Below, one piece after another: positions 1-41,355 of a stretch of 64,000 nucleotides of DNA; the stretch's first letter is position 1, and the number at the start of each line of letters is the position of its first letter. The position numbers and the translations under genes are program-made. The notes under the pieces are model-generated. The model saw nothing but the letters and a program-made list of their open reading frames with translations, was not told the origin of the DNA and searched no databases. The stretch is taken from the IMG/VR virus record IMGVR_UViG_3300050014_000823, positions 186,001 through 250,000 of that record. One strand, written 5' to 3'.

Positions 1-77
1 GGGTCGTTGTTATCATAGTCGTTTTTAGCAACTAAGTTTTTTCTGAATGGTACGCTGATATCTTCTAATCTGCTCAT
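1..77 (-). CDS. Partial CDS (N-terminus MSRLEDISVPFRKNLVAKNDYDNNDP), runs off the window start; hypothetical late protein
   Basis: ATG at 77-75, open to position 1, with a GTATTTATA motif upstream at 108-116. Confidence 0.6.
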   Translation of the reverse strand, partial: MSRLEDISVPFRKNLVAKNDYDNND

Positions 78-118
78 TTTATTTTGTTTTATATCTCAAT
101 TATTTACTATAAATACAA

Positions 119-904
119 TTAATCGTACTTTTTAAACGATAATGTTATGTATTCAATCAAATTTGGTACAATGTCCAGGTAATGCATTTCATCCACATCA
201 TACCAACCATAGTTTGTGTTTTCGGCATTATCTAACTCAATTTCAGTTGGGTCGCCCTCATATCGACAAGCAAAAACTGTTTCAATGCTCTCAGGATTCC
301 TTTGTATTGTGAAGGTCCTGACAAACTTATTAATTTCCAACCCAATTTCTTCAAGTATCTCTCTCTCAATAGCACGCTGTGGAGTTTCACCCTTCTCAAT
401 AGCACCACCAACCAATGCCCATTTCTCCGGCATCCAAGGTGCTTCTTTGCCTCTTTTCAACAGTAAAATCTTATTGTCGTTATTTACAATAACTGCAACG
501 GCATTTTTTTGTTTTTCTTCTTTCTTCTCTTTCTTTTCTTCATTCAGTGTTGGCATGGGACTATTCGGCATTAATTCTGAATTAGGATTTGATGTCATAT
601 CCTGCTTGGTTTCTTTTGACCTTGCCACACCTGCTCTATCTTGTGCTAATGAAGTTTCAATAAACTGTCTCATTGCTTCCCCACCAGCAAGGGCATATTG
701 TGTTTTATCATCAGTCTGTGGATTAAAATAATCAAAGAAGTTTTTAAGTCTTTTCATTGCTTGATATGTTAAATTACCGTTCTTAAGAATGAAATTAGCA
801 CGTTTAAGACCATTTTCATTCGAAGTGGATGCTTTAGCCACCGCAATACCATTAAGTACATTTGAGGGTATCCTATATGTCTTATCTTTGAGATATTGGT
901 TCAT
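119..904 (-). CDS. Nudix hydrolase with an N-terminal phage-type domain
   Basis: Canonical Nudix box GGAIEKGETPQRAIEREILEEIGL (GX5EX7REUXEEXGU) in the C-terminal half. Confidence 0.9.
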   Translation of the reverse strand: MNQYLKDKTYRIPSNVLNGIAVAKASTSNENGLKRANFILKNGNLTYQAMKRLKNFFDYFNPQTDDKTQYALAGGEAMRQFIETSLAQDRAGVARSKETKQDMTSNPNSELMPNSPMPTLNEEKKEKKEEKQKNAVAVIVNNDNKILLLKRGKEAPWMPEKWALVGGAIEKGETPQRAIEREILEEIGLEINKFVRTFTIQRNPESIETVFACRYEGDPTEIELDNAENTNYGWYDVDEMHYLDIVPNLIEYITLSFKKYD

Positions 905-2279: not shown

Positions 2280-5200
2280 TTATTCCGGACCATCGCCACT
2301 ATCATCGTAGCCAAAATCTGCAGCTTCTTCTTCCTGTTCGCTTTCCATGTTCTCCACATAAGTGTCGAATGCACCCATTGCTTCGGGTACTTCCACGAAA
2401 AGTTTATCCATAGTTATGTGTGCAGGAAGTCCAAATTGTTTCACAAAGCCGGGGAAGTGTAATATTCTTTTTTCTATCTTAGCTTTTAAATATTTATCCT
2501 TCTCAGTTTCAACATTAGCCTCTTCGAGATTTTTCAGTTTTTCTTGCTGTTCTGCTCTTTTTGTATCAAGTTCAAGTTCGATTTCACTCTTAGGTACTTC
2601 AACATTGTCTCTGATAATTTCCATGAAAATACCATTGAATTTACCCACATGATATTGGCTACCATCCTTAACGAGAACTAAATCACCCTTATCATATTTG
2701 TCATTAATTGACTTGATTTGTGGTTTACCGCTTGCTACCATTTTGTCGTTCAAGAACTTCAAAGCACCTTCGTAAATTTCGTAGTAAACTTTATCGTCTT
2801 CGTGCATCTTAAAACCATTCCACACAAGTCTTGGGTCATATCCGGTCTTATTCCAGAATTCCACTTCTTTAGGTTCGAGATACATTGAATCATCATAATC
2901 GTCACTGTCAAAGTTTTTAAGTTCGAGTTTTCCTGGTTCGTAACTACATTTAGTTATTTCCTCAATAGTACTTTTGTTGCCAAACTCATCTTTGACTTTC
3001 TTTTTCACAATCTTAGCAAGCATTGTATTAATTACCTCATCCTCAAAGCCAACAAGTATTGAACTAACTCTGCTGTTAAATGCATCAAGGTATTTCACGA
3101 CATTATAATAACCTGTCATTGTGGGATTCTCTTGAAGTTCTTCTGCACTAATTAAAGTAGATGCAAACCTGTCTTCACCAGTATCTTTGTCCTTAATTGT
3201 AGCTGAACTACCGTGAGACTTCAAATAACCTGTATTAACTTGGTATACAACAGAATCTAATTCGGGTTCGGGTGGCATATAATTAGCCACAAGTCTTAAT
3301 TTATCGTCCGATGTAAGTTTTTCTTCCTGCTTGGTGAAATTAATCTCTGCCTTATACTTTTCGAAAAGCGCATCAGCAATTCTATGACGTTTCTGTAGTA
3401 ATAACTCCATGTGTGCTTGCATTGCCTTATCCCTACCGTTCTTATCCTTACCTCTTTTCATGTAGGCATTTAAAGACATTTTAACCCTGTTCTTGGTTGC
3501 GATTTTCTTCAATGGAATTCTCTTATAGTATATGTCATCGACATAATCGTAGTAGTAATCAACAAACTCCTTACCCTTACCGTGGAGAATAAGTTCGAAA
3601 CCTTTGTCAATGAATTCTTCGATATACTCAGGCATTACTTTGGACTTAATTGTATTACCAGTGAGTTTGACTTTCTCTTTCATTTCACCTGTCTTTTTGT
3701 CTTTAACATTCGACAAGGTTGCATAGTTGATACGTGAAAGGTTCAAGCATGAAAGGAATTCACCGTCATTATCAACCGACATGTACGGTAATTTCATTTC
3801 CTCAGTGTTAAACTTTTTAATAAGTGCAGAAACACCTGTTTTACCACCATACTGCCACATATCCTCAATTAATCCCTCAGTTATTCCCTCAGTTATTCCC
3901 TCATCGGTAACTCTTATTGTGGTCCTGTCAGGAATATGGAAGTTTATACCGTCTGTTACAGCAAGCAATGCAACACAACCAAAACGATTGAACCATGTGA
4001 TTGCATGACGAAGTTCAAGACGACCTGCACAAGTAATACGAGCTGCACAAGTATTGTCCGACCAGTTGAATGACATATCCGAACCCAAAGCACCGAAAAG
4101 TGAGTTGTTCAAAATCTTAATAGGCAACTGCTTAACTTTAAACATTGCACGGTCCGCAGTGGTGAGAGTATCACTCAAATATTTTTTATGAACGTCAGGG
4201 TCAATCAGTTGTATCAACATAAGTTCTTCCTCGTTCAGTTTATCTGAATTTGCAAGTTTCTTATAAATGTTACGAGTAGTTGTAAGATACAACAACATTT
4301 TTCTGATAACACCCGTGATGTCGAACATCGGGAATATGTTCCAAGTTAACTGGAGCATAGGGTAAAGTGATGCGTAGTCAATCTTAACAAGTCTCTGTGT
4401 AAAACCAACCTTATAACATCTTGCAAGACCACCCGAAAAGTTTTCTTTCACATCGGAATGTGGAATAGCAAGGTCATTCTCATAACTCCATGCAGTCAAA
4501 AGTAAGTTCCAGATTGCAGCCGTACCCATAGTACAAACTCTCTGATAGGTAGTTGGTACAATCTTAGCCAACATGAATGCTGACTGATTATAAAGTTCAT
4601 CGACCTGTTCTGTTTCCCAAAGGTCATCGAGCAAGTAATTCTTAACAAGATTTTTACCACCGATAAAGGTTGTCATTTTCTTTGGGGCAGCTTCTGCTCT
4701 GAACCACTGAACAAATCCCGGACATTCATCAAGGCATTGAGTTCTTAATCCAGCATATTCTATATCTGAAAGATTGGCTTTATTTGCTTGTATTCTGTAT
4801 AATCTTCTTGAACATGTTTGAAATTCATCGGGTATCTGCAAATAATCGTTGGTTTCACTGACAAGAAACATTTTATTTTCAGTATAGTATCTGCCGATTG
4901 CATTGTCTTCTCCGGGAATATATGTTCTGTTCGGTCTGGCAATCTTCTCATGCTTGGCGATATACTTCAAACCATTTGCTTTGATTTCCGTGTTTACTGC
5001 AGCGGTTTTCTTAACAGCATGAATGATATCAATGACTGAAAGTCCCCACATTTCGGTTGCAGTAAACTTCTCAGCAGTATTACCATATTTTACTGAAACA
5101 TTGGGTCTTCTTTTAATATAGGTGTCTTTCTTTAATGTGGTTTGAAGTTTACCCATATTCATTTTGAGTTCCTTTGCCCTACCGAGAATAAAATCAAAGT

Positions 5201-32721: not shown

Positions 32722-33819
32722 TTATAGACTGAAATTTTTCTGCTTACGAGCCTTCTTACGAAGTTCGTTTACTTCCCTGTATGCGTCAGGATTAAACCTT
32801 TCACGCTTAACAACTGATACAAGGTGATTGAATTCGTTCTCAGTAATTACCTGTCCGATATAACCTTCTGCCTTGAGAACATAAGATTTGGGAGCACGGA
32901 GTGACTGAGACTGACCTTCGGTATCAAGTTTTGCTTCGAAGGTTAAATCAAGAATTTCTTGAATCTTTTCAGTAACATCAGCAGTCATTTTAGCTTTTGT
33001 CTGCTTCAATGCTCTTTCAAGCAAATCAACAACATTTTCCCTGTGAGTCTGCTTCAATTCCTCATATGTCTGAGTAAACTCATTCATAGTAGTTTTGTTC
33101 TTCAACTCACTAATAATTGCCAATGAACCGTAGCAGTCACGAATCATTAAATCCCATACCTGTTCAGCGTATGTGAATGAAGGAAACTTGTCTATTGCAA
33201 CAATCTCACCATCAATCAACACGATGATACCAATCAAGTTCTTTGGACGTTCAAAGTGTGCAATGAACTGTTCAAGTTTCTTGTCGAACTTCTCGAAGTA
33301 GATGTTCAAGTAGTTACCAGTACCAGACTTGGTATCTACACCTAACTTCTGAATAGCAGGGTAAATATTACCGTGACCTGATGTCTGACCAACTGCATCA
33401 AACAACATTTCACGCATAGATACGGGAATCATACGGAATTCCTGAGTTCCACGGAAGTATCCGGTCTGTCCACCTTGTACACAACCTGCGTCATGGAAAG
33501 TTGTCTGAGCACGTGGCTCAACATAACCAGCCTTTACCATACCGTGGTTCTGTGCCTGTTGCTTAGTTAAAACAGCCATCTGAGTAGGAAGAATAACTTC
33601 CTTATCCTGTTGGTTGGTAAACGTGATTTGACCATAGGTAGAGTTACTTGACACCAATGATGTCAAGGGATTCGCAAAGCGAGTATCCAATGAAAACTCA
33701 GCATCGGTTGTAAGGCATACAATCTGCATATTTAATATGCTTTGTACAATAATATTACCATCTTTATCTTTGACAGGACGGCAACCTTTCAATAATTCTG
33801 AAAAATCTTTTGTATTCAT
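32722..33819 (-). CDS. ARPP-1/DUF6569-like protein
   Basis: N......VILP......QAQNH......YV.P......AGCVQ.G core and a GIIVLIDGEIVAIDKF C-terminal segment; recognised from family patterns, not by search. Confidence 0.6.
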   Translation of the reverse strand: MNTKDFSELLKGCRPVKDKDGNIIVQSILNMQIVCLTTDAEFSLDTRFANPLTSLVSSNSTYGQITFTNQQDKEVILPTQMAVLTKQQAQNHGMVKAGYVEPRAQTTFHDAGCVQGGQTGYFRGTQEFRMIPVSMREMLFDAVGQTSGHGNIYPAIQKLGVDTKSGTGNYLNIYFEKFDKKLEQFIAHFERPKNLIGIIVLIDGEIVAIDKFPSFTYAEQVWDLMIRDCYGSLAIISELKNKTTMNEFTQTYEELKQTHRENVVDLLERALKQTKAKMTADVTEKIQEILDLTFEAKLDTEGQSQSLRAPKSYVLKAEGYIGQVITENEFNHLVSVVKRERFNPDAYREVNELRKKARKQKNFSL

Positions 33820-34376
33820 AACGTATTGATTTTAATGTTATTAATTTCACACTCTAATTTATATGCATTAAATGCTAATTCTTCTGTTTCAAATCTACCT
33901 AAAAATTTTGTTTTACCTTGAATGTTAATTCTTGAAATCCAAGGTTTTTGATATTTTTCTTTAACATACGATACTCCAACATATTTACTACTACTTTTCA
34001 TTTTTGTTCTCGCATGATGAGTATTTTCTCTTGAAGTGCACCATTCTAAGTTAGAAGAAAAATTATTTTTCTTATTTCTATCTTTATGATTTACTTCATC
34101 CAAATTATTTGGATTAGGAATGAATGCTTCTGCAATTAATCTGTGTAAACAAAATGCTTTATTTATACAATTTTTCGATAAAGTAACCAGCACATATTTA
34201 CCTTGATTAATAAACGTACCTTTCAACGAACCCTTCAGTCTTCGACTGACACCATTTCTGTTAATTTCATTTCTATCCAAACTTCTAACTCTTCCAAAAT
34301 TACTTATTTGATAATAACCCTCATATCCGACAACATCTTTCCAATTTTCAAACAATATTCTTGGGTAGTGAAACAT
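33816..34376 (-). CDS. NUMOD4-HNH-AP2 homing endonuclease
   Basis: WKDVVGYEGYYQISNFGRVRS (NUMOD4), HRLIAEAF...VNHKDRNKKNN (HNH), SKYVGVS...LGRF.TEELA..AY (AP2). Confidence 0.9.
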   Translation of the reverse strand: MFHYPRILFENWKDVVGYEGYYQISNFGRVRSLDRNEINRNGVSRRLKGSLKGTFINQGKYVLVTLSKNCINKAFCLHRLIAEAFIPNPNNLDEVNHKDRNKKNNFSSNLEWCTSRENTHHARTKMKSSSKYVGVSYVKEKYQKPWISRINIQGKTKFLGRFETEELAFNAYKLECEINNIKINTL

Positions 34377-34388
34377 ATTAATTTGCGT

Positions 34389-36032
34389 TTAAGCGTTTAC
34401 ACTAATTTTTTTAATTCTCTTAACAGGAGCAGCTTCAAGAGCAAGAACCTGGTTTTCAAGCCAACGTTTGGTGTCAATTTCAAGTAACCTTGCGTTAATC
34501 TGTGGCTGTAAAGCTGCAGGGTTGTTAATTGCCATTGTGACAACACCCTTACCTAAAGTCCTTACATTAGCACCCATTTCGGCACTGGTAATCGGTGAAA
34601 TCTGGAATGTTGGTACACTCCTTCCACTTTCTGCTTGCCAGATTGAGATAACTTCGTTAGTCAATCCATCGTAAGCGTTTTCGTAACCATCGGTTAAGAT
34701 GAAAATTGCATCGTATGGCTTTGAAGGGTTTTCTTCCTTCAAAAGTTCAATAAATGCACTTGCAATATCACTTGCAAAACCTTTAGTATCAACTCTGTTA
34801 GATTCCCTTGCAGATGCCATAAGAACCAATGAAGTGAAATCTGCAATTGCCCTTGGGGTATTCTTTGATTCGGTCTTGTCACCTGTCATTGAGATACTAC
34901 CGTCAACAATAATACCGATATTCTGGTAGAAGAAACCTGCAATTTTCTTTTTATCTGCAAGTTTTACAATTGCTGACCTTAATTCTGGTGTGAAAGTTGT
35001 TTCATAACCAGTTTTGTAAAGTGCAAGGAAGTCTGTTGCCTTTTCAACCTCAACGTGTTTTTCAACACCGAGTTTTGCGGTTGATTTGGTCTGACGGACC
35101 TGCTGGTTTACAGAAGTTACCTTCACATTCTTACGAATGAGTGCCTTTGTAGCTTCTCTCTGAACCTTAGTTGACCACAATGAGTGATACTGAGGGTGTG
35201 AAGTACTTGCAACCATACCGATAAGAACTTCTTCCGGTACTGAACTTACAGAAGTAATGTCAGTTTTTGCCTTCTGGTATTCTGACAAAAGTGGAAATTC
35301 GTTTGCAGGATACTGAACGCCAACAAAGTTAGCACCACAATCCCTCTTGAACAAGAACATCAATAACTTATATGCACGAGTATCACTACCGTTAAAGTAC
35401 TTGAGAATGTTCTTAGTTGCAATTGTCAATTCCTTGTCACTTCCGTACAAACCATTTGTGATTATGTTCTTCTGTGCAATTGAAAGCAATACTGATGTCT
35501 TTTTAACACCATAAACGTGACGTAAAATCTGAGCAATCTTGTTACGGTACTTCAATGAGTAGAATTCCAAGTTAGTTTGACCCCAGATAAAGCCAAGAAT
35601 GATTTTCCTTGACCTTTCGTTGTTAATCTTAGCATCCTTTAAGTCTACGAAAAGACGTAATACATATGGAAGACCGTTTTCACCCAAGTTGTTGAGTGCG
35701 GTAAGAACTGCCTTATCACTAAGACCATTATCATACCAGTCGATTGGATTAACAATATTACATGCGCCACCCTTCAAAGTATTTTTAAATTCGTTTAAAA
35801 GTACCTCAGACACGAACTGTCCAGTCGCACCCTTTTGACTTGCTATAATCAAAGGGAGTTCCTTAGAAAGACCGTACATCTTCTTGATTTCCTTCTGGAG
35901 AGCAATTGCTTGCTCATCCCTGCTGTGGTAGTAAGTTGCTGATGCTTTGCTACCTGATGCTGTGGTAAGACCGTCAATCAGTGTCTGTTTAACGCTTACA
36001 AGCATTTTCTGTGTTAATACCAACTTTTCCAT
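34389..36032 (-). CDS. Helical N-terminal domain plus C-terminal vWA domain protein (TROVE/Ro60-like architecture)
   Basis: MIDAS motifs IIVDGSISM and IFILTDGYEN; ~370-aa basic helical N-terminal region (INNERSRK, KYRNK); 547 aa, similar in size to Ro60. Confidence 0.65.
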   Translation of the reverse strand: MEKLVLTQKMLVSVKQTLIDGLTTASGSKASATYYHSRDEQAIALQKEIKKMYGLSKELPLIIASQKGATGQFVSEVLLNEFKNTLKGGACNIVNPIDWYDNGLSDKAVLTALNNLGENGLPYVLRLFVDLKDAKINNERSRKIILGFIWGQTNLEFYSLKYRNKIAQILRHVYGVKKTSVLLSIAQKNIITNGLYGSDKELTIATKNILKYFNGSDTRAYKLLMFLFKRDCGANFVGVQYPANEFPLLSEYQKAKTDITSVSSVPEEVLIGMVASTSHPQYHSLWSTKVQREATKALIRKNVKVTSVNQQVRQTKSTAKLGVEKHVEVEKATDFLALYKTGYETTFTPELRSAIVKLADKKKIAGFFYQNIGIIVDGSISMTGDKTESKNTPRAIADFTSLVLMASARESNRVDTKGFASDIASAFIELLKEENPSKPYDAIFILTDGYENAYDGLTNEVISIWQAESGRSVPTFQISPITSAEMGANVRTLGKGVVTMAINNPAALQPQINARLLEIDTKRWLENQVLALEAAPVKRIKKISVNA

Positions 36033-36086
36033 AGTGAATGTTTAAAAATTTACATTACAATTATTAATAAAAAACATTTCAGAGTG

Positions 36087-36116
36087 CAAATATACTATTA
36101 AATCTGAAACATCAAA
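36087..36116 (-). promoter_or_regulatory. Bacteroidota sigmaA-type promoter (TTTG-N18-TATATTTG) for the vWA-HNH-ARPP operon
   Basis: caaatata at 36087-36094 and caaa at 36113-36116. Confidence 0.65.
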
Positions 36117-36125
36117 ACATATTCG

Positions 36126-36186
36126 AAAAAAAAAACAAAAAAAATGGGCGAGTAGACACATTTCTATGTCAGTCCCCGCCCATTTT
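36126..36186 (-). terminator. Terminator closing the ncRNA operon
   Basis: aaaatgggcg...cgcccatttt stem followed by a long U-tract on the minus strand. Confidence 0.75.
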
Positions 36187-36216
36187 CTCTTCGAAAAACA
36201 CTTCTCTCTATTAAGG

Positions 36217-36310
36217 AGAAGAAGTTTAGTTGTAATTTGGTAAGTTTGTCCCTCTTCTTCATGAGAGGGATTACATTTTTCAATCTACTGTATTCACAAC
36301 AAGTTCTTCT
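36217..36310 (-). ncRNA. Handle-RNA unit 1 (Y-RNA-like; hairpin cargo)
   Basis: 5' AGAAGAACTT-GTTGTGA-ATACAGT pairs with 3' TTACAAC-TAAAC-TTCTTCT; internal TCCCTCT/AGAGGGA hairpin. Confidence 0.6.
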
Positions 36311-36552
36311 GTCAAATTGCTGCTTCAGGTGGCACGCTCCGAAGAACCCGACATCTACTCACAACAATATGTCTTTTTTTATGAAAAAATAAGCACTTCT
36401 GCTTAAAAAACCATTCTTAATCATCAAATGTTAGGCGACACGCCCCGTTTTTTGTAAAAAACACTCTGGTGCCGACAGCCTAAAAACTTCAAGCGGTGGG
36501 GTTTACTTGATTTAATTTAAATTTGGTTTAACCCTTACCACTTTTAAAACTT

Positions 36553-36707
36553 GGGGAACATTTTAATAGTATTTGTTGTTTTTCTTTTGATAGTTTAACT
36601 GACTATTGACTTTACCACTTGTCTACTTCCCCAAATTTGTTTTGTTATTTGTGGGGAAGGAAGGACTCGAACCTCCGATATTACTGTAAACACTTTTAGT
36701 TTTCCCT
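36553..36707 (-). ncRNA. Handle-RNA unit 2 containing a circularly permuted tRNA-Asn(GTT)-like domain (YrlA-like)
   Basis: Order on the minus strand: handle, T arm GGAGG-TTCGAGT-CCTTC, acceptor 3' CTTCCCC, linker, acceptor 5' GGGGAAG, D arm GAC-AAGTGGTAAA-GTC, arm ATAGT-CAGTTAA-ACTAT, handle complement. Confidence 0.75.
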
Positions 36708-36718
36708 TCGTATCTTCA

Positions 36719-36807
36719 CCCGAAAGTTTGTGTTGCCACAGGGACAGTCGGGAATTCCAGAAACACGGTTACTTTACTTTCGTAAGAGGCTTTTCCGTGC
36801 ATACCTG
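36719..36807 (-). ncRNA. Two GNRA-capped structured hairpins within the ncRNA operon
   Basis: CACGG..TTAC-GAAA-GTAA..CCGTG and CCCGA..TGTG-GCAA-CACA..TCGGG. Confidence 0.45.
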
Positions 36808-36816
36808 AAAAATTTG

Positions 36817-36925
36817 TGGGGAGAGCAGGCTTCGAACCTGCAAATCATTGAGTTCAAATCAATTGCTTTACCTTTTACTGAAAACACAATCAGTTCTCTC
36901 ATCTAAGAGAGCAGTGAGTATGTAT
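36817..36925 (-). ncRNA. Handle-RNA unit 3: hairpin-closed handle fused to the 3' two-thirds of a tRNA (anticodon loop TTTGAAC)
   Basis: CTCTC-ttagat-GAGAGAACTGATTGTGTTTTCAGT, then GGTAAAGC, ATTGA-TTTGAAC-TCAAT, GCAGG-TTCGAAG-CCTGC, TCTCCCCA. Confidence 0.6.
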
Positions 36926-37090
36926 ATTGAAATTGGATTATGGTCTACATGAGAATGAGCGTGTTATCAGCATAATCCTTAACCAACCTTATTTTCTCAA
37001 TTAGATGTAAAAACTCAAAAAAATCAATATATTTGATAAGTTTTCAATATAGCCATACGAATAAAGTTTTTTTAATTAAAAGTGGTTAAA

Positions 37091-37417
37091 ATGACAAATC
37101 AAACATTCAGTGGACAATTGGGTTTTGTTATTAAAAAAATCCACGCAATTAATAAAAGCGGAAAATGGTTCTATTTTTTTAGCAATACCGATATAACTAA
37201 TACTATTTCAAATAATTACAAAATAGTTGGTGTTGATGTTAATATATTCTCTATCACAAATAACTTAAAAACGTTAATTGATATTGTTGGCTCTTTGAAA
37301 ACCAATGATAATGAATTAAATGATTTATCTATAGAACCATACCCACTATTTAAAATTCCTGAAATAACTCAAGAGAATTCTTCTGAGGAATGGTATCTGA
37401 TATTTATTACAGGTTGA
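37091..37417 (+). CDS. Hypothetical protein (inserted in the ncRNA region)
   Basis: ORF only; overlaps the 3' end of an opposite-strand ORF. Confidence 0.35.
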   Translation: MTNQTFSGQLGFVIKKIHAINKSGKWFYFFSNTDITNTISNNYKIVGVDVNIFSITNNLKTLIDIVGSLKTNDNELNDLSIEPYPLFKIPEITQENSSEEWYLIFITG

Positions 37418-37639
37418 TGCCTTATCCCATTCTGGAATTAGATTAATTATTCTTTTAATATTTTTTTCTGGAGTCCAACAACTAAGTAATCCATTCTTAG
37501 TTATATCAATATTAAAGTAAACATGCAAAACATTATCACTTGAATAACCGTGATATTTATAGTATGCAAAGAACACTCTCCTTTCATACCATCGTAGTAG
37601 CCAATACATAAATTTATTAACTGGATTATATTTTTTCAT
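37346..37639 (-). CDS. Hypothetical protein (MKKYNPVNK...)
   Basis: ATG at 37639 preceded by a GTATTTATA motif at 37654-37662. Confidence 0.45.
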   Translation of the reverse strand: MKKYNPVNKFMYWLLRWYERRVFFAYYKYHGYSSDNVLHVYFNIDITKNGLLSCWTPEKNIKRIINLIPEWDKASTCNKYQIPFLRRILLSYFRNFK

Positions 37640-37661
37640 TATTGATATATAATTATAAATA

Positions 37662-37910
37662 CTAATAATAATTATTAGCAAAACCACCAATTGCCGTTTT
37701 GTTTAAAAAGAGTTTGTTCAATTCATCTTTACTGGGTAAATACCAATCGCTATAGCTACCTAATACCAAATCAGAACACAATTTTGCAGCATAGTTTCCT
37801 GCCCCCTGATTACTGACTACAGTGTTTGTGTTCGCATTTCCAGTTCCCAATCCTGTTGCTGTTGCCCCTGTTGTAGTATTAGTTCCATTATACCATTGTA
37901 TACCTGTACT
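37662..37910 (-). pseudogene. Fragment of a DUF1566/Lcl-C (C-type lectin fold) gene
   Basis: STGIQWYNG..TGATATGLGTG..NT...AAKLCSDL...YSDWYLPSKDELNKL...GGF.NNYY*; no in-frame ATG; stops where YWSS is expected. Confidence 0.65.
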
Positions 37911-37956
37911 ATAGTATCTTTTGTTTTATTTTTGCTATCTCCCCATATTAATACTT

Positions 37957-37968
37957 TGTTAAAGAACG
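37957..37968 (-). promoter_or_regulatory. boxA-like antitermination element (CGTTCTTTAACA)
   Basis: Near-match to the rrn boxA TGCTCTTTAACA; similar sites at 39006-39018 and 39168-39179. Confidence 0.55.
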
Positions 37969-37979
37969 TTTAAAAATTT

Positions 37980-38057
37980 AAGAAGAATTTCGTCAGTCTT
38001 GTTTTGTAGTTTTCTGATTTGCCGTCAAATTTACTGTAAACACCAACAGTTCTTCTT
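37980..38057 (-). ncRNA. Handle-RNA unit 4 (minimal)
   Basis: AAGAAGAACT-GTTGGT-GTTTACAGT ... ACTGAC-GAAA-TTCTTCTT; small TTTG-acgg-CAAA hairpin cargo. Confidence 0.6.
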
Positions 38058-38139
38058 TTATTTCTCGAAATCTATTGGCGCAGTCTTCTTGTGACTTACC
38101 TTTGTCGGAGTGTTATGCCGAGACCATTAAATTTCATTG

Positions 38140-38212
38140 TAGCGTTGGACAGGACTCGAACCTGTGATTCCGAGCTTATGAGGCTCGTGAGATGCCGCTT
38201 CTCTACCCCGCT
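38140..38212 (-). tRNA. tRNA-Met(CAT), initiator-like 5' end, imperfect acceptor stem, CCA not encoded
   Basis: AGCGGGG-TA-GAGA..TCTC, anticodon arm CGAGC-CTCATAA-GCTCG, T arm ACAGG-TTCGAGT-CCTGT. Confidence 0.8.
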
Positions 38213-38958
38213 ATATGCTTCTCAAAATTTTCAAATTCCTTTGTTACAAAGGATTTATCGAATTTTCCTAAATCTTTTATAACATATGGTTCATACCCAC
38301 AACCAATAATTTCTTTAATTTTTAATTTATCTCTATTCTCTGTTTGTAATAATGAATGATTTTTCGATATTTTCTTATAATGCCAAGCACCATTCCATAA
38401 TACTGCAATTTTATAATCTTCTATAATTACATCTGCATCCCATCCATTAAAAATTTGTTCATTACAAAGAACCAACTTAAATTTCTCACAACATAATTTA
38501 GCAAAATATATTTCGTTTTTACTTCTTTTATTTTGTGATTTTACAGAACATAAACCACCAATTCTTTCATACCCTTTCAGTGGCATTCGGAATTTTGTGG
38601 CACATGAATGTCCACAAAATCTTTGGTTTACTTTCTTCTGTTCAAAACTATTTTCACAATATTCACAATTAATAATTTTAACCTTTTTGTTTTTTAATGA
38701 AAGTTTATCTTTTGTTCCTTGTGAATGTACTCTCTTATTAGCACAGCCTCGTGAACAATAATATATTTTCTTTTGTGGGTGTAGTTTTTCACGTTCATTT
38801 ACAATAAAAATTTTAGCACATGAAATACATTTAACCGAATAATCAACAAACTTACCATATTTTTTATCATTTTTTTGAGTATTTTGAAACTCATTTTGAC
38901 AAGAAACATTACAAAATTTATTTTTTACCAATTTTCCACAATTCAAACAATTATTCAT
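38203..38958 (-). CDS. Putative homing endonuclease: CxxC zinc-finger repeats plus a PD-(D/E)XK/Vsr-like domain
   Basis: Three C..C...(F/Y)C...C repeats; WDADVIIEDYKIAVLWNGAWH; own late motif at 38972-38980; last codons overlap the tRNA-Met 5' end. Confidence 0.7.
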   Translation of the reverse strand: MNNCLNCGKLVKNKFCNVSCQNEFQNTQKNDKKYGKFVDYSVKCISCAKIFIVNEREKLHPQKKIYYCSRGCANKRVHSQGTKDKLSLKNKKVKIINCEYCENSFEQKKVNQRFCGHSCATKFRMPLKGYERIGGLCSVKSQNKRSKNEIYFAKLCCEKFKLVLCNEQIFNGWDADVIIEDYKIAVLWNGAWHYKKISKNHSLLQTENRDKLKIKEIIGCGYEPYVIKDLGKFDKSFVTKEFENFEKHIAG

Positions 38959-39028
38959 AATACATATTTATTATAAATACTGCGGACTTTTAAATCGAAC
39001 CATAGTTTTCAAAGAACATTATAAGGTA

Positions 39029-39154
39029 AAAAGGATAATTCGTTTGTTATTTTTGTTTTAAACAATGAGGTTTCGACACCCCAACATTCTGCCTGAAAAG
39101 CGGACACTCTACTTTGAGTTAATTGTATACTGTAATAACGAACAGTTTCCTTTT
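39029..39154 (-). ncRNA. Handle-RNA unit 5 enclosing a degenerate cloverleaf (anticodon loop TTTTCAG, Glu-like)
   Basis: AAAAGGAAACT-GTTCGTTATT-ACAGT ... AATAACAAAC-GAATTA-TCCTTTT; inside: ACAAT/ATTGT stem, ACTC-aaagta-GAGT D arm, TCCGC-TTTTCAG-GCAGA arm, degenerate T arm. Confidence 0.65.
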
Positions 39155-39167
39155 GTATTTTAAATCT

Positions 39168-39230
39168 TGTTAAAGAACATTTGTCATTTCGGACGATGCA
39201 AACATAATACACTTTTATTTAACATGCAAG
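39168..39230 (-). promoter_or_regulatory. SigmaA-type promoter (TTG-N20-TATGTTTG) followed by boxA-like TGTTCTTTAACA, driving the ncRNA operon
   Basis: caag 39227-39230, caaacata 39199-39206, tgttaaagaaca 39168-39179; a late-type motif also lies at 39276-39284. Confidence 0.65.
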
Positions 39231-39324
39231 TGTTTTCTGAAAAAAATTAAAAATATTTTTACTATCGTCTGGGATTATAAATACGTAATAGTTTTAAAAA
39301 AGTTACAAAAAAATATAAAAATTT

Positions 39325-41355
39325 TTATCTTAATCTTATATCTTCCTCATTTACACGCATTTTACCCAAGTAATCAAACACATGTTTTTGGTCAGAACTT
39401 ACTTCATCGGGGTCAATTAACAACTTTTTTTCTGCCTCACTAAGGTCAATTTTTTTCTTAGAAATCGGATTTTTATTCACATTGCTGACCATTTCGTGCA
39501 CAGATTTTCGAACTTCTGGCTCAATTTTCGGCTTAATATCTTCGAATTTTACCTCAGTTTCATTCGTGGCAGTAGTAAAAGTTTCTCCCGACCAATTTAA
39601 TAACTCTGGTTCTACACCATCATTTACACCCTCACTTACACCATCATTTACACCATCACTTTTTTCAATAGGTTTGTCTTCAAGTATGAATTTATCGTCA
39701 CTTGCTTCCTCATTTGCACCCTCATTTGCACCCTCACTTACACCATCATTTACACCATCATTATTATCTATTTCACGTGTTGAGATTCCCGGAGATACAA
39801 ATTGTGAAGTATCTATGGGTTTCTTTTCCTCGATATTTTCTGATTTTATATATGCACTTCTCAATAACTCGTCTTCCGCAGTTAATCCCCCTGCATTGCT
39901 TACAAGAGTATTAAATAAACCACCCGGAGAATGAGATTCAATTGATTCTGCTTTTCCAGCTATTACATCTTCACTATATTTTTTCTTTACACTATATGTT
40001 GTACCTACATATCTTTCGTCAGTAATTTTAATTTCCATTGTATCGTTGTTAAAGATACAGTCTTTAAATGTCTGACCGTCTTTAGCAAACCTTGCCTTAA
40101 TAATACGTATACTTGCGAGACTTGCTTCTTTCTGGTCAGGAGTTTTAGCTACCGACATAAAGAAGTGTGCTTTCTGTACTCTCTTGATGTTACCACCAGA
40201 CTGATGCGCCTCAACGAGTTCAGCATCAAAACCTGAACGATTACTCTGAATTGCAGACCAACATGGAATGTCAAAATCACTTGCCATTGCTTCAAACGAC
40301 TTAACAATTTGAAGTTCAGCCTCATTACGGTCATTGACTTTCTTGTGAGATTCTAAACAATCAAGATAGTCAAGTATAATAATATCGAATTTAATACCTG
40401 TTTTTTTCTGTTCTCTGAGAATCCAGTCTTTAATATCCGTCATTGTGGTATTTTCCTGGCTGAACTTTTTCACTTTAAGTTTACCCGGATTCATGTGTGC
40501 AATATGGTCATTTGCCTTTTGAAGTGCTTCGTCATTTCTTTCATCGAGTTCACTTAAAGGTATTCCTGTCCAAATAGTAACATGCTTTCTCTTAATTTGT
40601 TCTTCGGTATCCTCAAAAATAATCTGACATACATTATAATCATGTGCACGTGCAGTATTGGCAATTTTAGTCAGTAATGTTGTTTTACCAACACCTGAAG
40701 GAGTCAAAATTAATCCAATTTCGCCTTTACCCAATCCACCACCAGTAAGTGTGTCAATAACACCAACACCAGTAGGAATTGTTTTACGAAATTCTTTCAT
40801 TAGTGCTTTGTCAAGACCCTCTGTTGCATCACTACCATTATCTTCTGTATTGCCGATAAGTGCAATTTTTTGCATTTTTTCGTCAAACTCAGGTAAGAAG
40901 GTCTTGCTACGAATCTCACCTGTTTTTACTTTTGCAAGAACACCCTCTGCCCATTTGCGTATTTCTTGCTGTTTAATAAATTCAGTAGTTGCCTGTTGAA
41001 CAACTATTCCATCGTGCATTAAAGTCTGATTGAGAATTCTTTCATTCCACAACTTAACTCTTTCGATTACAGCAAAAAGTGATTCTTCCTCAATAACATT
41101 ATTGGGAGATTTGAATTCGTTTATGGCTTGGATTACACTCTGATTCTGTAGATTAGGTACTTTACCGTATCTCTTGACGTATTCCAACATAATAAGGAAT
41201 AACCTCTTTATGTTAGGGTCATCAAAGTATTCTACTGCTAAGATTGGTATTGTTCTCTCGGCATATTCTGGTTCAACCAGAAGTTGCCACAATAATTTTT
41301 GTTGAAATTCCGGACCTTTGTATGCCGTTAAGGTATTATCTAATTGTTCGCTCAT
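39325..41355 (-). CDS. Replicative DnaB/T4 gp41-like helicase with an acidic C-terminal extension
   Basis: IPTG...D....GG...GE; Walker A PSGVGKT; IILDYLD; SAIQSNR; IKARF. Confidence 0.92.
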   Translation of the reverse strand: MSEQLDNTLTAYKGPEFQQKLLWQLLVEPEYAERTIPILAVEYFDDPNIKRLFLIMLEYVKRYGKVPNLQNQSVIQAINEFKSPNNVIEEESLFAVIERVKLWNERILNQTLMHDGIVVQQATTEFIKQQEIRKWAEGVLAKVKTGEIRSKTFLPEFDEKMQKIALIGNTEDNGSDATEGLDKALMKEFRKTIPTGVGVIDTLTGGGLGKGEIGLILTPSGVGKTTLLTKIANTARAHDYNVCQIIFEDTEEQIKRKHVTIWTGIPLSELDERNDEALQKANDHIAHMNPGKLKVKKFSQENTTMTDIKDWILREQKKTGIKFDIIILDYLDCLESHKKVNDRNEAELQIVKSFEAMASDFDIPCWSAIQSNRSGFDAELVEAHQSGGNIKRVQKAHFFMSVAKTPDQKEASLASIRIIKARFAKDGQTFKDCIFNNDTMEIKITDERYVGTTYSVKKKYSEDVIAGKAESIESHSPGGLFNTLVSNAGGLTAEDELLRSAYIKSENIEEKKPIDTSQFVSPGISTREIDNNDGVNDGVSEGANEGANEEASDDKFILEDKPIEKSDGVNDGVSEGVNDGVEPELLNWSGETFTTATNETEVKFEDIKPKIEPEVRKSVHEMVSNVNKNPISKKKIDLSEAEKKLLIDPDEVSSDQKHVFDYLGKMRVNEEDIRLR
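39612..39760 (-). repeat. 12-bp-unit coding tandem repeats (GVND/GVSE/GANE) in the helicase tail
   Basis: tacaccatcatt / tacaccctcact / tgcaccctcatt units in two clusters. Confidence 0.75.

What the first reader, a model, noticed from the sequence alone, without database searches (positions are those of the whole stretch)
36817..36925. Unit 3: handle in reversed topology fused to a tRNA lacking its 5' acceptor strand
Here the handle's complementary strand lies upstream (CTCTC-ttagat-GAGAG hairpin). It is followed by a D-loop remnant, an anticodon arm (loop TTTGAAC), a perfect T arm and TCTCCCCA. The 3' end CCCCACAAAT is shared with unit 2, which suggests common ancestry. The orphan acceptor strand could pair imperfectly with unit 2's TGGGGAAG, giving an alternative fold. 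The handle is therefore attached at different points of the tRNA scaffold in units 2, 3 and 5.
Basis: partly seen in the sequence, partly recalled or inferred. Interest (0 to 1): 0.6.

Follow-up and report, generated by a model that had tools for sequence, protein, structure and literature searches.

The report
Split tRNA-like Y RNA beside phage Ro60
The "tRNA without a 5' strand" is one of five small RNA genes of a giant phage that carry the same conserved stem ("handle") grafted onto tRNA-shaped RNAs. They sit in front of an unannotated Ro60-like protein gene, so they are most likely Y-RNA-type tRNA mimics, and this copy has been cut in two by a 1-kb insertion.

Summary
Everything lies on the minus strand. 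The listed features exist: hairpin CTCTC/GAGAG, a 20-nt conserved box, D-loop remnant, anticodon arm, T arm and TCTCCCCA. The missing 5' acceptor strand also exists. GGGGAGATAGC lies at 37944-37934, separated by a 992-nt insertion unique to this genome. In more than 70 related ~300-360 kb phage contigs the unit is contiguous. It is a tRNA cloverleaf with a ~55-60-nt two-helix "handle" inserted in the D arm.

The same handle flanks a complete tRNA (39153-39015). It opens a circularly permuted tRNA at the variable loop (unit 2, 36706-36554). It also closes two non-tRNA hairpins. Covariation supports every helix.

In 80 loci the array lies 0.2-3 kb upstream of a 547-aa protein with no Pfam match. 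Its model matches Ro60/TROVE structures over its full length (Z 12-14). An ARPP-1 gene follows.

Best reading: a phage Ro60 with an array of Y-RNA-like tRNA mimics, where the handle is the Ro60 docking stem. This is a new variant of the YrlA/Rsr theme. Binding is inferred, not shown. The main rival is that the handle is an excision or processing signal. The orphan strand and the pairing with unit 2 were wrong.

The parts
37956..37967 (-). GTTCTTTAACAA box, a conserved element 8-25 nt upstream of handle units. Here it lies 11 nt before the 5' acceptor strand of unit 3.
   Evidence: Searches show it conserved in relatives before the 5' acceptor strand of D-arm units (class a). One search shows it before some variable-loop units (class b), and before the window's flanked tRNA (class c). 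It is not a genome-wide motif. Its role as a leader or processing element is inferred.
37934..37944 (-). 5' piece of the unit-3 tRNA-like RNA: acceptor 5' strand GGGGAGA + U8 A9 + G10 C11.
   Evidence: It is a perfect complement of TCTCCCC at 36824-36818. The same 11-mer directly precedes the handle in relatives.
37911..37933 (-). L strand of the unit-3 handle (AAAAATAAAACAAAAGATACTAT). It is an A-rich linker plus AAGAUAC, which pairs with GUGUUUU of the R-box (helix 2).
   Evidence: A second copy lies at 36588-36566 in unit 2. Helix 2 is supported by covariation in 21 orthologues.
36919..37910 (-). 992-nt lineage-specific insertion that splits the handle's L side (CUAU|CUC). It begins with a start-less DUF1566/Lcl_C-like ORF fragment. 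It also holds an opposite-strand ORF at 37082-37417.
   Evidence: It is absent from all related loci and unique in the genome. In the closest relatives the unit (d) to unit (a) box spacing is 162 nt, against 1156 nt here. Weak Lcl_C and phrog_4245 hits are.
36912..36918 (-). CTCACTG, the rest of the handle's L side between the insertion and helix 1.
   Evidence: It aligns with ...ATACTAT-CTCACTG-CTCTC... of relatives.
36896..36911 (-). Helix 1 of the handle, closed as a hairpin: CTCTC-ttagat-GAGAG.
   Evidence: It covaries in relatives (CUCC/GGAG, CUCCC/GGGAG, CUCUU/AAGAG...).
36876..36895 (-). R-box AACUGAUUGUGUUUUCAGUA. AAC is an internal loop, nnnGUGUUU is the helix 2 strand, and (U/A)CAGUA is a conserved single-stranded joint to the cargo.
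   Evidence: There are 5 copies in the window against 0.28 expected. It is conserved in >70 loci. Helix 2 pairing is.
36817..36875 (-). 3' body of the unit-3 tRNA-like RNA: D loop and D-stem 3' strand, anticodon-like arm (loop UUUGAAC), variable loop, T arm, acceptor 3' strand, discriminator A.
   Evidence: Rfam tRNA 27.5 bits, model positions 9-63. With the insertion removed in silico the RNA folds to a cloverleaf plus handle (-38.1 kcal/mol).
36554..36706 (-). Unit 2 is a circularly permuted tRNA-like RNA. In order: GGGAA, R-box, variable loop, T arm, acceptor 3' strand, 20-nt loop (ACAA...), acceptor 5' strand, D arm, anticodon-like arm, L strand, UUCCC.
   Evidence: 45 orthologues, 98.1% of cells paired against 80.6% shuffled, 0/500. 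In 30 of 45 copies N-CCA follows the acceptor 3' strand.
39015..39153 (-). Class (c) unit: a complete tRNA (39128-39059, anticodon UUC, 36.4 bits) whose 5' leader (AAAGGA + R-box) and 3' trailer (..AAUAAC..ACGAA..UCCUUU) form the same handle.
   Evidence: 30 orthologues; helix 1 and helix 2 predicted, with compensatory changes.
37981..38057 (-). Class (d) unit: a handle (GAAGAA/UUCUUC and GUUGGUGUU/AAGACUGAC) closing a small hairpin, with no tRNA module.
   Evidence: 21 orthologues.
36218..36311 (-). Class (e) unit: a handle closing a GC-rich hairpin. A further hairpin and a terminator-like hairpin plus U-run (36186-36130) follow.
   Evidence: An RNA-library contig covers 36192-36323 exactly.
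34389..36032 (-). Gene for a 547-aa Ro60/TROVE-like protein: a helical ring domain plus a C-terminal vWA domain with MIDAS residues D377, S379, S381, T447, D448.
   Evidence: No Pfam or PHROG match. AF2 model pLDDT 72.6. The top 12 Foldseek hits are all Ro60/Rsr/TROVE. VIA-align Z is 14.3-11.7 over ~400 residues. The nearest language-model clusters are TROVE/vWA_Ro60.
32722..33819 (-). ARPP-1 domain gene, the operon partner of the Ro60-like gene. In this window an HNH endonuclease gene (33816-34376) separates them.
   Evidence: Pfam ARPP-1 E 3.7e-15. It lies 15-45 nt after the Ro60-like gene in most of 67 loci. It is fused to a Ro60-like domain in P0269.

Best explanation
The window comes from a ~300-kb phage of a large, uncultured clade seen in peat and soil. 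The clade has Bacteroidota-type promoters.

**The locus.** Upstream of a strongly diverged Ro60 (TROVE + vWA) gene and its ARPP-1 partner lies an array of five small RNA genes. Each carries the same ~45-nt two-strand 'handle'. Its parts, in order, are:
- helix 1
- an AAC / AAAAU internal loop
- a ~8-10-bp helix 2 (GUGUUU x AAAUAC in most units)
- a conserved single-stranded (U/A)CAGUA joint

**Proposed role.** I take the handle to be the Ro60 docking stem of Y-type RNAs. I take the variable cargo to be the effector module, which in three units is a tRNA-shaped RNA. This parallels bacterial YrlA, where Rsr binds the stem and the tRNA-like domain engages tRNA-recognising proteins.

**Attachment points.** The handle is grafted at three topologically different places on the tRNA:
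- on the leader and trailer of a complete tRNA
- in the D arm (the finding, unit 3)
- in the variable loop, with the RNA ends moved there and the acceptor stem closed by a loop that usually encodes N-CCA (unit 2)

**Unit 3 in this genome.** A 992-nt insertion in the handle has cut unit 3 in two. Its 5' acceptor strand and one handle strand now lie 1.07 kb upstream. This copy therefore works only as a long read-through transcript, or as two RNAs pairing in trans, or it is decaying.

**Shown:** the sequences, the structures with covariation, the synteny, the Ro60-like fold and the insertion.
**Inferred:** that the protein binds the handle, and what the ribonucleoprotein does.
For: **The motif**
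- 5 copies in the window against 0.28 expected, and none elsewhere in the genome.
- Conserved in >70 related loci, always abutting the cargo.

**Structures**
- Class (a): 21 sequences, 98.0% of cells paired against 85.3% shuffled, covariation 0.475 against 0.208, 0/500.
- Class (b): 45 sequences, 98.1% against 80.6%, 0.458 against 0.133, 0/500.
- Classes (c) and (d) show the same two helices.

**Synteny**
- In 80 loci the array lies 0.2-3 kb upstream of the 547-aa gene on the same strand, mostly in the order ..d, a, b, e, gene.
- A phage whose protein is only 28% identical (LR756500.1) has the same kind of units upstream.

**The protein**
- The top 12 Foldseek hits are all Ro60/Rsr/TROVE, including Thermus phage phiLo Ro60.
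- VIA-align Z 14.3-11.7 over ~400 residues spanning 16..520-536.
- TROVE/vWA_Ro60 clusters are nearest by language-model features, score 0.94, 184 of 256 features.
- The MIDAS residues are invariant.

**Precedent**
- YrlA RNAs have a T arm, an acceptor-like stem closed by a loop, and a D arm. They lie next to rsr in >250 bacteria and phages. M. smegmatis YrlA is cut by RNase P and receives CCA (PMC4201824).
- phiLo Ro60 binds two upstream Y-like RNAs built as stem-bulge-stem with a CGAA motif (PMC12135203).
- About half of the class (b) copies read AACGAAAAG in the handle.
- 30 of 45 class (b) copies encode N-CCA in the acceptor loop.

**The insertion**
- Absent from all relatives.
- The joined sequence folds as its orthologues do.
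Against: - No sequence-level link to Ro60. Pfam TROVE fails on the protein and on the genome. A profile of the family finds no PDB sequence. Distant family members give only weak vWA hits. TM-scores are low (0.38).
- Rfam has no Y-RNA-type match here.
- The window's own handles lack CGAA (AACUAAAAG, AACUGAUUG).
- Known Y RNAs bind Ro60 through a stem formed by the RNA termini. In unit 3 the handle is an internal hairpin within an otherwise normal tRNA with open acceptor ends. That looks as much like an intron as like a docking stem.
- The 5' acceptor strand also pairs with the handle's L side. This extra pairing (P1) reaches -7 to -14.5 kcal/mol with type-specific sequences. The Y-RNA model does not explain it.
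- Class (c) units are ordinary-looking tRNAs, some with suppressor-type anticodons (UCA, UUA), which hints at decoding.
- Expression evidence is thin. RNA-library contigs cover units 2 and (e) only, and none covers unit 3.
Confidence: 0.6

Rival explanations
1. The handle is an excision or processing signal, a functional analogue of the archaeal bulge-helix-bulge motif. An endonuclease cuts both strands at its base, after CAGUA and before the A-rich strand. This releases a ready tRNA from class (c). It removes a D-arm 'intron' from class (a). It yields a permuted tRNA from class (b), which is then circularised by an RNA ligase and re-opened at the encoded CCA. On this reading unit 3 is a tRNA gene with an intron that acquired an insertion.
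For: - The cargo is a complete cloverleaf with canonical U8, A14, G18G19 and GTTCRA, a 7-bp acceptor stem and a discriminator.
- The handle always sits exactly at the junction.
- N-CCA is encoded in 30 of 45 permuted copies.
- The P1 pairing of the last ~7-10 nt of the 5' piece with the intervening sequence resembles exon-binding guides of self-splicing introns.
- The anticodons of class (c) include UCA and UUA, in a genome with a CUA suppressor tRNA.
- An RNA contig of unit 2 starts 5 nt before the end of the box.
Against: - No spliced or circular joint was seen. The RNA contig of unit 2 runs unbroken through the L strand and ~50 nt beyond.
- There is no RtcB in the phage, and Rfam matched no ribozyme or intron family across 35000-40500.
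- Units (d) and (e) carry the handle but no tRNA to release.
- Anticodon-like loops of classes (a) and (b) are hypervariable, and 15 of 45 class (b) loops lack U33.
- 7 of 45 class (b) acceptor stems are closed by 5-nt loops with no CCA.
- This model gives no reason for the strict linkage to the Ro60-like gene.
Confidence: 0.22
2. Unit 3 is simply a dead tRNA gene truncated by an insertion. The 'handle' is insertion debris, a promoter, or the end of a mobile element.
For: - A 992-nt insertion really does separate the two parts in this genome.
- No RNA contig covers unit 3.
- Some relatives lack a class (a) unit at this position (L004, L047).
Against: - The handle is present, in place and covarying in intact orthologues without the insertion.
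- The box lies inside the RNA structure, not at the insertion ends.
- The insertion has no copies elsewhere.
- In class (c) a Bacteroidota-type -7 box (TATGTTTG) lies upstream of the handle, so the handle is transcribed.
Confidence: 0.05
3. Unit 2 and its downstream region form a two-piece (permuted) tmRNA, and unit 3 is a related fragment.
For: There is a weak Rfam tmRNA_permuted hit (19.7 bits, E 0.57) on the T arm, acceptor 3' strand, linker and acceptor 5' strand.
Against: - The score is far below the 47-bit threshold, and ARAGORN finds no tmRNA.
- A full D arm and an anticodon-like arm are present.
- The candidate 'tag' region covaries as a helix and has no conserved C-terminal residues (direct reading).
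Confidence: 0.02

Closest known systems
YrlA-type Y RNAs with Rsr/Ro60 (Chen et al. 2014, PMC4201824)
   Same: - Small RNAs are encoded just upstream of a Ro60 gene, several per locus.
- A stem-loop-stem is joined to a tRNA-like domain.
- Unit 2 has the YrlA order: T arm, acceptor-like stem closed by a loop, D arm.
- A 7-bp acceptor stem with CCA recalls M. smegmatis YrlA, which is cut by RNase P and receives CCA.
- Part of the copies carry a CGAA-like motif in the 5' strand.
   Different: - The protein is not recognisable as TROVE by sequence.
- The handle sequence (AAC..GUGUUU.CAGUA) differs from GNCGAAN0-1G.
- The tRNA module keeps an anticodon-like arm, and the stem leaves from the variable loop, not from the anticodon-stem position.
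- The same stem is also grafted into the D arm of an unpermuted tRNA (unit 3) and onto the leader and trailer of a complete tRNA. Neither arrangement has been described for Y RNAs.
- There are five units per locus, and an ARPP-1 partner gene.
Thermus phage phiLo Ro60 with Yrl1/Yrl2 (PMC12135203; PDB 9KOP, 9L5Y)
   Same: - A phage-encoded Ro60 with Y-like RNAs directly upstream.
- These are the best structural matches of the 547-aa model (Z 14.3 and 13.7).
   Different: - There is no detectable sequence similarity.
- The phiLo Yrls are described as stem-bulge-stem RNAs with CGAA, not as complete tRNA cloverleaves in several topologies.
Circularly permuted tRNA genes (Cyanidioschyzon merolae and some other algae) and archaeal split or intron-bearing tRNAs with bulge-helix-bulge motifs (from my own knowledge)
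   Same: - In unit 2 the 3' half lies upstream of the 5' half, joined by a short linker after CCA.
- Intervening sequences sit at non-canonical positions (D arm, variable loop).
- In the window, unit 3 is physically split.
   Different: - Those systems use the splicing endonuclease plus a ligase, and a BHB motif. Here there is a different, much larger conserved two-helix element.
- No endonuclease or ligase gene was found here and no spliced product was seen.
- The organisms here are a bacterial virus and its host.
Two-piece (permuted) tmRNA
   Same: The T arm and CCA-bearing strand lie upstream of the 5' acceptor strand on one transcript.
   Different: - There is no tag reading frame.
- Full D and anticodon-like arms are present.
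- The score is far below the Rfam threshold, and ARAGORN is negative.

Membership tests
YrlA / Y RNA | Encoded adjacent to a Ro60/Rsr gene | tested here: met
   The array lies 0.2-3 kb upstream of the Ro60-like gene on the same strand in 80 loci. The Ro60-like fold is supported.
YrlA / Y RNA | A stem formed by paired strands with an internal loop carrying GNCGAAN0-1G / CGAA | tested here: inconclusive
   The helix 1 - internal loop - helix 2 architecture is supported by covariation. AACGAAAAG occurs in about half of the class (b) copies. The window's units read AACUAAAAG and AACUGAUUG.
YrlA / Y RNA | tRNA-like domain in the order T arm, acceptor-like stem closed by a loop, D arm | tested here: not met
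   Unit 3, the finding, has the normal tRNA order with open acceptor ends and the stem in the D arm. The feature is met only by unit 2 / class (b).
YrlA / Y RNA | Match to a curated Y-RNA covariance model | tested here: not met
   Rfam scan of 35000-40500 at E<=10 gives only tRNA and weak tmRNA hits.
YrlA / Y RNA | Bound by Ro60 | not testable with these tools
   Needs EMSA, RIP or a structure.
Ro60 / TROVE protein (the 547-aa neighbour) | Pfam TROVE (PF05731) match | tested here: not met
   No Pfam family at E<=0.01. No TROVE in the genome at E<=1. The family profile finds no PDB sequence.
Ro60 / TROVE protein (the 547-aa neighbour) | Helical ring domain followed by a vWA domain with a MIDAS motif | tested here: met
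   Full-length structural matches to Ro60/Rsr/TROVE only, at Z 14.3-11.7. DxSxS...T-D is invariant. TROVE/vWA_Ro60 clusters are nearest by features.
Canonical tRNA gene | Contiguous cloverleaf scoring above the Rfam RF00005 threshold | tested here: not met
   27.5 bits against a 29-bit threshold, model positions 9-63 only. ARAGORN finds none. The 5' strand is 1.07 kb away.
Canonical tRNA gene | Conserved anticodon identity and U33 among orthologues | tested here: not met
   Class (a) loops vary (GUUGAAA, UUUGAAC, CGUUAAA, CAGUAAA...). Class (b) has 26 different loops in 45 copies, and 15 lack U33.
Permuted or intron-bearing tRNA gene processed by splicing | Spliced or circular junction in RNA; endonuclease and ligase available | tested here: inconclusive
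   No joint was seen in the one RNA run, which consists of contigs only. There is no RtcB in the phage. Host enzymes were not examined.
Two-piece tmRNA | tmRNA model match and a tag reading frame | tested here: not met
   tmRNA_permuted 19.7 bits against 47, tmRNA 13.1 bits against 47. ARAGORN finds none.
Group I/II intron or small self-cleaving ribozyme | Match to a curated model | tested here: not met
   No such Rfam hit at E<=10 in 35000-40500.

The most novel reading that the evidence does not exclude
The handle may be a portable module that lets a phage Ro60-ARPP machine act on tRNA-shaped RNAs held in three different topologies. At least some units may then mature into working tRNAs. In that case these would be the first circularly permuted tRNA genes, and the first D-arm and variable-loop intervening sequences, in a bacterial virus. 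They would be excised at a new kind of conserved two-helix motif, with the window's unit 3 being a naturally split (two-piece) tRNA gene.
Probability: 0.15. Interest if true: 0.9.

Novelty: new variant of a known kind. Interest (0 to 1): 0.62.

Why it matters
Ro60 and its Y RNAs are an ancient RNA-surveillance system whose bacterial and phage roles are still poorly understood. Four things follow from this locus.

- **An unannotated Ro60-like family.** A large family of 'hypothetical' proteins has a Ro60-like fold: 377 clusters at 50% identity, found on contigs up to ~360 kb.
- **A natural grafting experiment.** The locus carries five RNAs. One conserved stem is grafted onto tRNA scaffolds at the acceptor ends, in the D arm and in the variable loop. 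This marks which RNA element probably docks the protein, and shows that the cargo is deliberately tRNA-shaped.
- **A new partner.** Conserved adjacency and one gene fusion link this Ro60-like family to ARPP-1, a predicted enzyme acting on ribose-containing molecules. This points to a new RNA-repair or counter-defence module in giant phages.
- **A warning for annotation.** These phages look almost tRNA-free to standard tools, yet they carry several tRNA-like genes that are permuted, interrupted or split.

Tried and rejected
- **ARAGORN.** It found no tRNA or tmRNA in the window and a single tRNA(CUA) in the genome.
- **Rfam.** At permissive thresholds there was no ribozyme, intron or Y-RNA family, only a weak tmRNA_permuted hit, which I rejected.
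- **Other readings of the 20-nt box.** I considered a CRISPR-type repeat or crRNA handle, a T7-like promoter ending at +1, a hammerhead core (CUGANGA/GAAA is absent) and an IS end. I rejected all four. The box pairs with a partner strand with covariation. It is transcribed downstream of a Bacteroidota-type -7 box. It occurs only in this locus.
- **Pfam searches of the genome.** TROVE and RtcB were both negative.
- **Profile search of PDB sequences.** Nothing found.
- **Word-index protein search.** It returned only unannotated close relatives.
- **My own scan for the partner strand by complementarity alone.** It did not beat shuffled controls in this AT-rich DNA, so I dropped it in favour of class-wise alignments.
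- **Read evidence.** The only RNA run is kept as contigs. It shows units 2 and (e) present in an RNA library, but gives no ends, no joints and nothing for unit 3. The 'joints' in DNA runs are alignments of diverged relatives to different box copies, not deletions.
Unit 2 folds on itself, and there is no unit 2 - unit 3 acceptor pairing.
- **DNA similarity to known phages.** There was only a short coding match to Lak-C1 and tRNA-level matches.
Full report
**1. What is at the coordinates**

All features lie on the minus strand. Reading 36925 to 36817 gives, in order:
- a hairpin CTCTC-ttagat-GAGAG (36911-36896)
- a 20-nt box AACTGATTGTGTTTTCAGTA (36895-36876)
- AAAGGTAAAGCA, which is a D loop plus the D-stem 3' strand
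- an anticodon-like arm with loop TTTGAAC
- a 5-nt variable loop
- a perfect T arm
- TCTCCCC and a discriminator A

Rfam's tRNA model aligns positions 9-63 to 36879-36825 at 27.5 bits. The threshold is 29. ARAGORN sees no tRNA in the window.

The box is not a chance feature. Five copies lie within 36286-39147, where 0.28 would be expected. The 299-kb genome has no other credible copy.

**2. The 'missing' strand**

About 90 nt downstream of the box copy at 38051-38032 the minus strand reads GGGGAGATAGC (37944-37934). This is the exact complement of TCTCCCC, followed by U8, A9 and the first two D-stem bases. A 23-nt A-rich element follows it (37933-37911). That element has one other copy in the genome, right after the 5' part of unit 2 (36588-36566).

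Related contigs show how the pieces belong together. In them the sequence is contiguous: GGGGAGAUAGC - A-rich element ..AAAUACUAU - CUCACUG - hairpin - box - AAAGGUAAAGC... - UCUCCCCA, about 135 nt in all.

The window differs by 992 nt inserted between ..ACTAT and CTCACTG (37910-36919). The evidence for an insertion is as follows:
- In the closest relatives the boxes of units (d) and (a) are 162 nt apart. Here they are 1156 nt apart.
- The inserted DNA occurs nowhere else in the genome or in any related locus.
- It opens with a start-less fragment of a DUF1566/Lcl_C-like reading frame.

With the insertion removed in silico, the RNA folds into an acceptor stem, the handle, an anticodon arm and a T arm (-38.1 kcal/mol). 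As two separate pieces the RNAs still co-fold through the acceptor stem (-39.0 against -23.8 kcal/mol). Pairing of TCTCCCC with unit 2's GGGGAAG is weaker than with its own partner (-8.7 against -12.2 kcal/mol).

**3. The handle**

RNAalifold and pair counting on 21 class (a) orthologues give a 4-bp hairpin (helix 1) and an 8-bp helix 2. Helix 2 forms between AAAUACUA of the A-rich (L) strand and UAGUGUUU of the box (R strand). The tRNA helices are predicted as well.
- 98.0% of cells are paired, against 85.3% after shuffling.
- 15 pairs carry compensatory changes.
- 0 of 500 shuffles reach the observed values, and shifted registers collapse to ~50%.

AAC at the start of the box, and (U/A)CAGUA at its end, stay unpaired and nearly invariant.

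The same two helices recur in the other four units:

| Unit | Window position | How the handle is attached | Evidence |
|---|---|---|---|
| 2, class (b) | 36706-36554 | The RNA begins GGGAA + box and ends AAAUACUnnn-AAAAU-UUCCC. Between them lie a variable loop, T arm, acceptor 3' strand, a loop, acceptor 5' strand, D arm and an anticodon-like arm. This is a circularly permuted cloverleaf with the handle leaving from the variable loop. | 45 orthologues, 98.1% paired against 80.6%, every helix with compensatory changes, 0/500 |
| class (c) | 39153-39015 | The leader and trailer of a complete tRNA form the handle. | |
| classes (d), (e) | 38057-37981 and 36311-36218 | The handle closes small non-tRNA hairpins. 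| |

In 30 of 45 class (b) copies the acceptor 3' strand is followed by N-CCA inside the closing loop.

In the D-arm units helix 1 is closed as a hairpin upstream of the box. In the variable-loop units the same helix is formed by the two ends of the unit.

**4. Context**

In 80 related loci the units lie 0.2-3 kb upstream of one conserved gene on the same strand. The usual order is ..(d), (a), (b), (e), gene.

That gene (34389-36032, 547 aa) has no Pfam or PHROG match. Its 368 word-search relatives and 377 representative clusters are all unannotated.

Three lines of evidence point to a strongly diverged Ro60:
- An AlphaFold model (pLDDT 72.6) finds only Ro60/Rsr/TROVE structures as its top 12 Foldseek matches. 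The second aligner gives Z 14.3-11.7 over ~400 residues spanning the whole chain. The best matches are the Thermus phage phiLo Ro60 entries.
- Language-model features independently place it next to TROVE/vWA_Ro60 clusters.
- The family has invariant MIDAS residues in a C-terminal vWA domain.

There is no sequence-level link. I therefore call it a strongly diverged Ro60 on the basis of fold, architecture and context.

An ARPP-1 gene follows it at 15-45 nt in most of 67 loci. In the window an HNH endonuclease gene is wedged between them. One distant relative fuses the two domains.

A 462-kb phage (LR756500.1) has a protein only 28% identical, yet it carries the same kinds of units upstream.

**5. 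Interpretation**

Bacterial and phage Ro60 genes are known to be preceded by Y RNAs. In the YrlA class, a stem is joined to a tRNA-like domain ordered T arm, closed acceptor-like stem, D arm. M. smegmatis YrlA is even cut by RNase P and given CCA (PMC4201824). phiLo Ro60 binds two upstream stem-bulge-stem RNAs (PMC12135203).

Unit 2 reproduces the YrlA topology. All five units share a stem-loop-stem whose 5' strand is the most conserved part. The linkage to the Ro60-like gene holds over large evolutionary distances.

I therefore read the array as Y-type RNAs, the handle as the Ro60 docking stem, and the tRNA-shaped parts as effector modules. Unit 3 is a variant in which the stem sits in the D arm of an otherwise unpermuted tRNA-like RNA. 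In this genome it is broken by an insertion.

Binding and function are inferred. What the RNP does is open. Possibilities include recruiting or decoying tRNA-recognising enzymes, perhaps together with ARPP-1.

**6. What does not fit, and the main rival**

Four observations sit uneasily with the Y-RNA reading:
- In class (a) the last 7-10 nt of the 5' piece also pair with the handle's L side. The sequences are type-specific, at -7 to -14.5 kcal/mol and a mean z of -2.3. This competes with the acceptor stem and with helix 1 or helix 2. It resembles an exon-binding guide or a folding switch.
- Class (c) units are ordinary tRNAs whose anticodon changes between close relatives and includes UCA and UUA.
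- N-CCA is selected in the permuted units.
- The handle sits exactly at the junctions.

These points keep alive the reading that the handle marks sites of excision. On that reading the units mature into tRNAs, including permuted ones.

Against it:
- Units (d) and (e) have no tRNA.
- The anticodon-like loops of (a) and (b) are unconstrained, and a third of the (b) loops lack U33.
- Some acceptor loops are 5-nt caps.
- No ligase or ribozyme was found.
- The single RNA data set shows an unspliced unit 2.

I give this rival about 0.2.

**7. Limits**

The only RNA run is stored as contigs, and part of it comes from relatives. It cannot show ends or levels, and it has nothing on unit 3.

Noticed in passing
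window 32722-33819 (-), 33816-34376 (-); protein P0269: An ARPP-1 domain gene is the conserved operon partner of the Ro60-like gene, lying 15-45 nt behind it in most of 67 loci. In the window an HNH/NUMOD4 homing-endonuclease gene is wedged between the two. A distant relative (884 aa) fuses the Ro60-like domain with ARPP-1/ARPP-2. This association is not among those the paper that named ARPP lists for it (PMC9503650).
   Followed up: partly
window 38141-38211 (-): A tRNA-Met(CAU)-like gene scores 44 bits in Rfam, but its acceptor stem is broken (GCGGGG against CCAACGC: two mismatches and one missing base). It overlaps the 3' end of ORF 38203-38958. Relatives have an intact version with a 1-72 mismatch just upstream of unit (d).
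   Followed up: partly
window 39059-39128 (-) and orthologues in L006-L107: The class (c) tRNA body is conserved, but the anticodon differs between close relatives (UUC, UCA, UUA, GUC, CGC, GUU, CGU, CCU, CAA...). The set includes stop-codon-reading types.
   Followed up: partly
window 36312-36550 (-): A conserved structured non-coding stretch without a handle lies between units 2 and (e). It includes a covarying hairpin GGCUGUYGGYAYCAGAG...GGGGCRURYCRCC followed by UAACAUUUGA and GGUUAAGAAUGGUUUU. It could be a further RNA of the locus.
   Followed up: no
window 36707-36816 (-): Two hairpins lie between units 3 and 2 (CACGG..GCCUCUUACGAAAGUAAAGUAA..CCGUG and CCCGA..GUCCCUGUGGCAACAC..UCGGG). 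Both recur in relatives, often followed by the GTTCTTTAA box.
   Followed up: no
window 36919-37910: The 992-nt insertion carries a start-less DUF1566/Lcl_C-like frame (37910-37665), further frame-shifted pieces, and an opposite-strand ORF of 111 aa (37082-37417). It has no terminal repeats and no second copy.
   Followed up: partly
genome C1:1380-1453 (outside the window): The only tRNA that ARAGORN finds in the 299-kb genome has anticodon CUA (reads TAG). Among ORFs of at least 150 aa the stop codons are TAA 191, TGA 43, TAG 20. I did not test for recoding.
   Followed up: no
L111 (LR756500.1) 1864-1998, 2256-2390, 3355-3480: A 462-kb uncultured phage with a Ro60-like protein only 28% identical carries the same handle units. 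It has a flanked complete tRNA and two tRNA-like RNAs with the handle near or in the D arm. The box variant there is AACUCNAAGUNAUUACAGWA.
   Followed up: partly
window 36501-36686 and 36192-36323: A peat metatranscriptome (run X24, contigs only) holds a 186-nt contig over unit 2 that starts 5 nt before the end of the box and runs past the handle's 3' strand. It also holds a contig identical over 132 nt to unit (e).
   Followed up: yes
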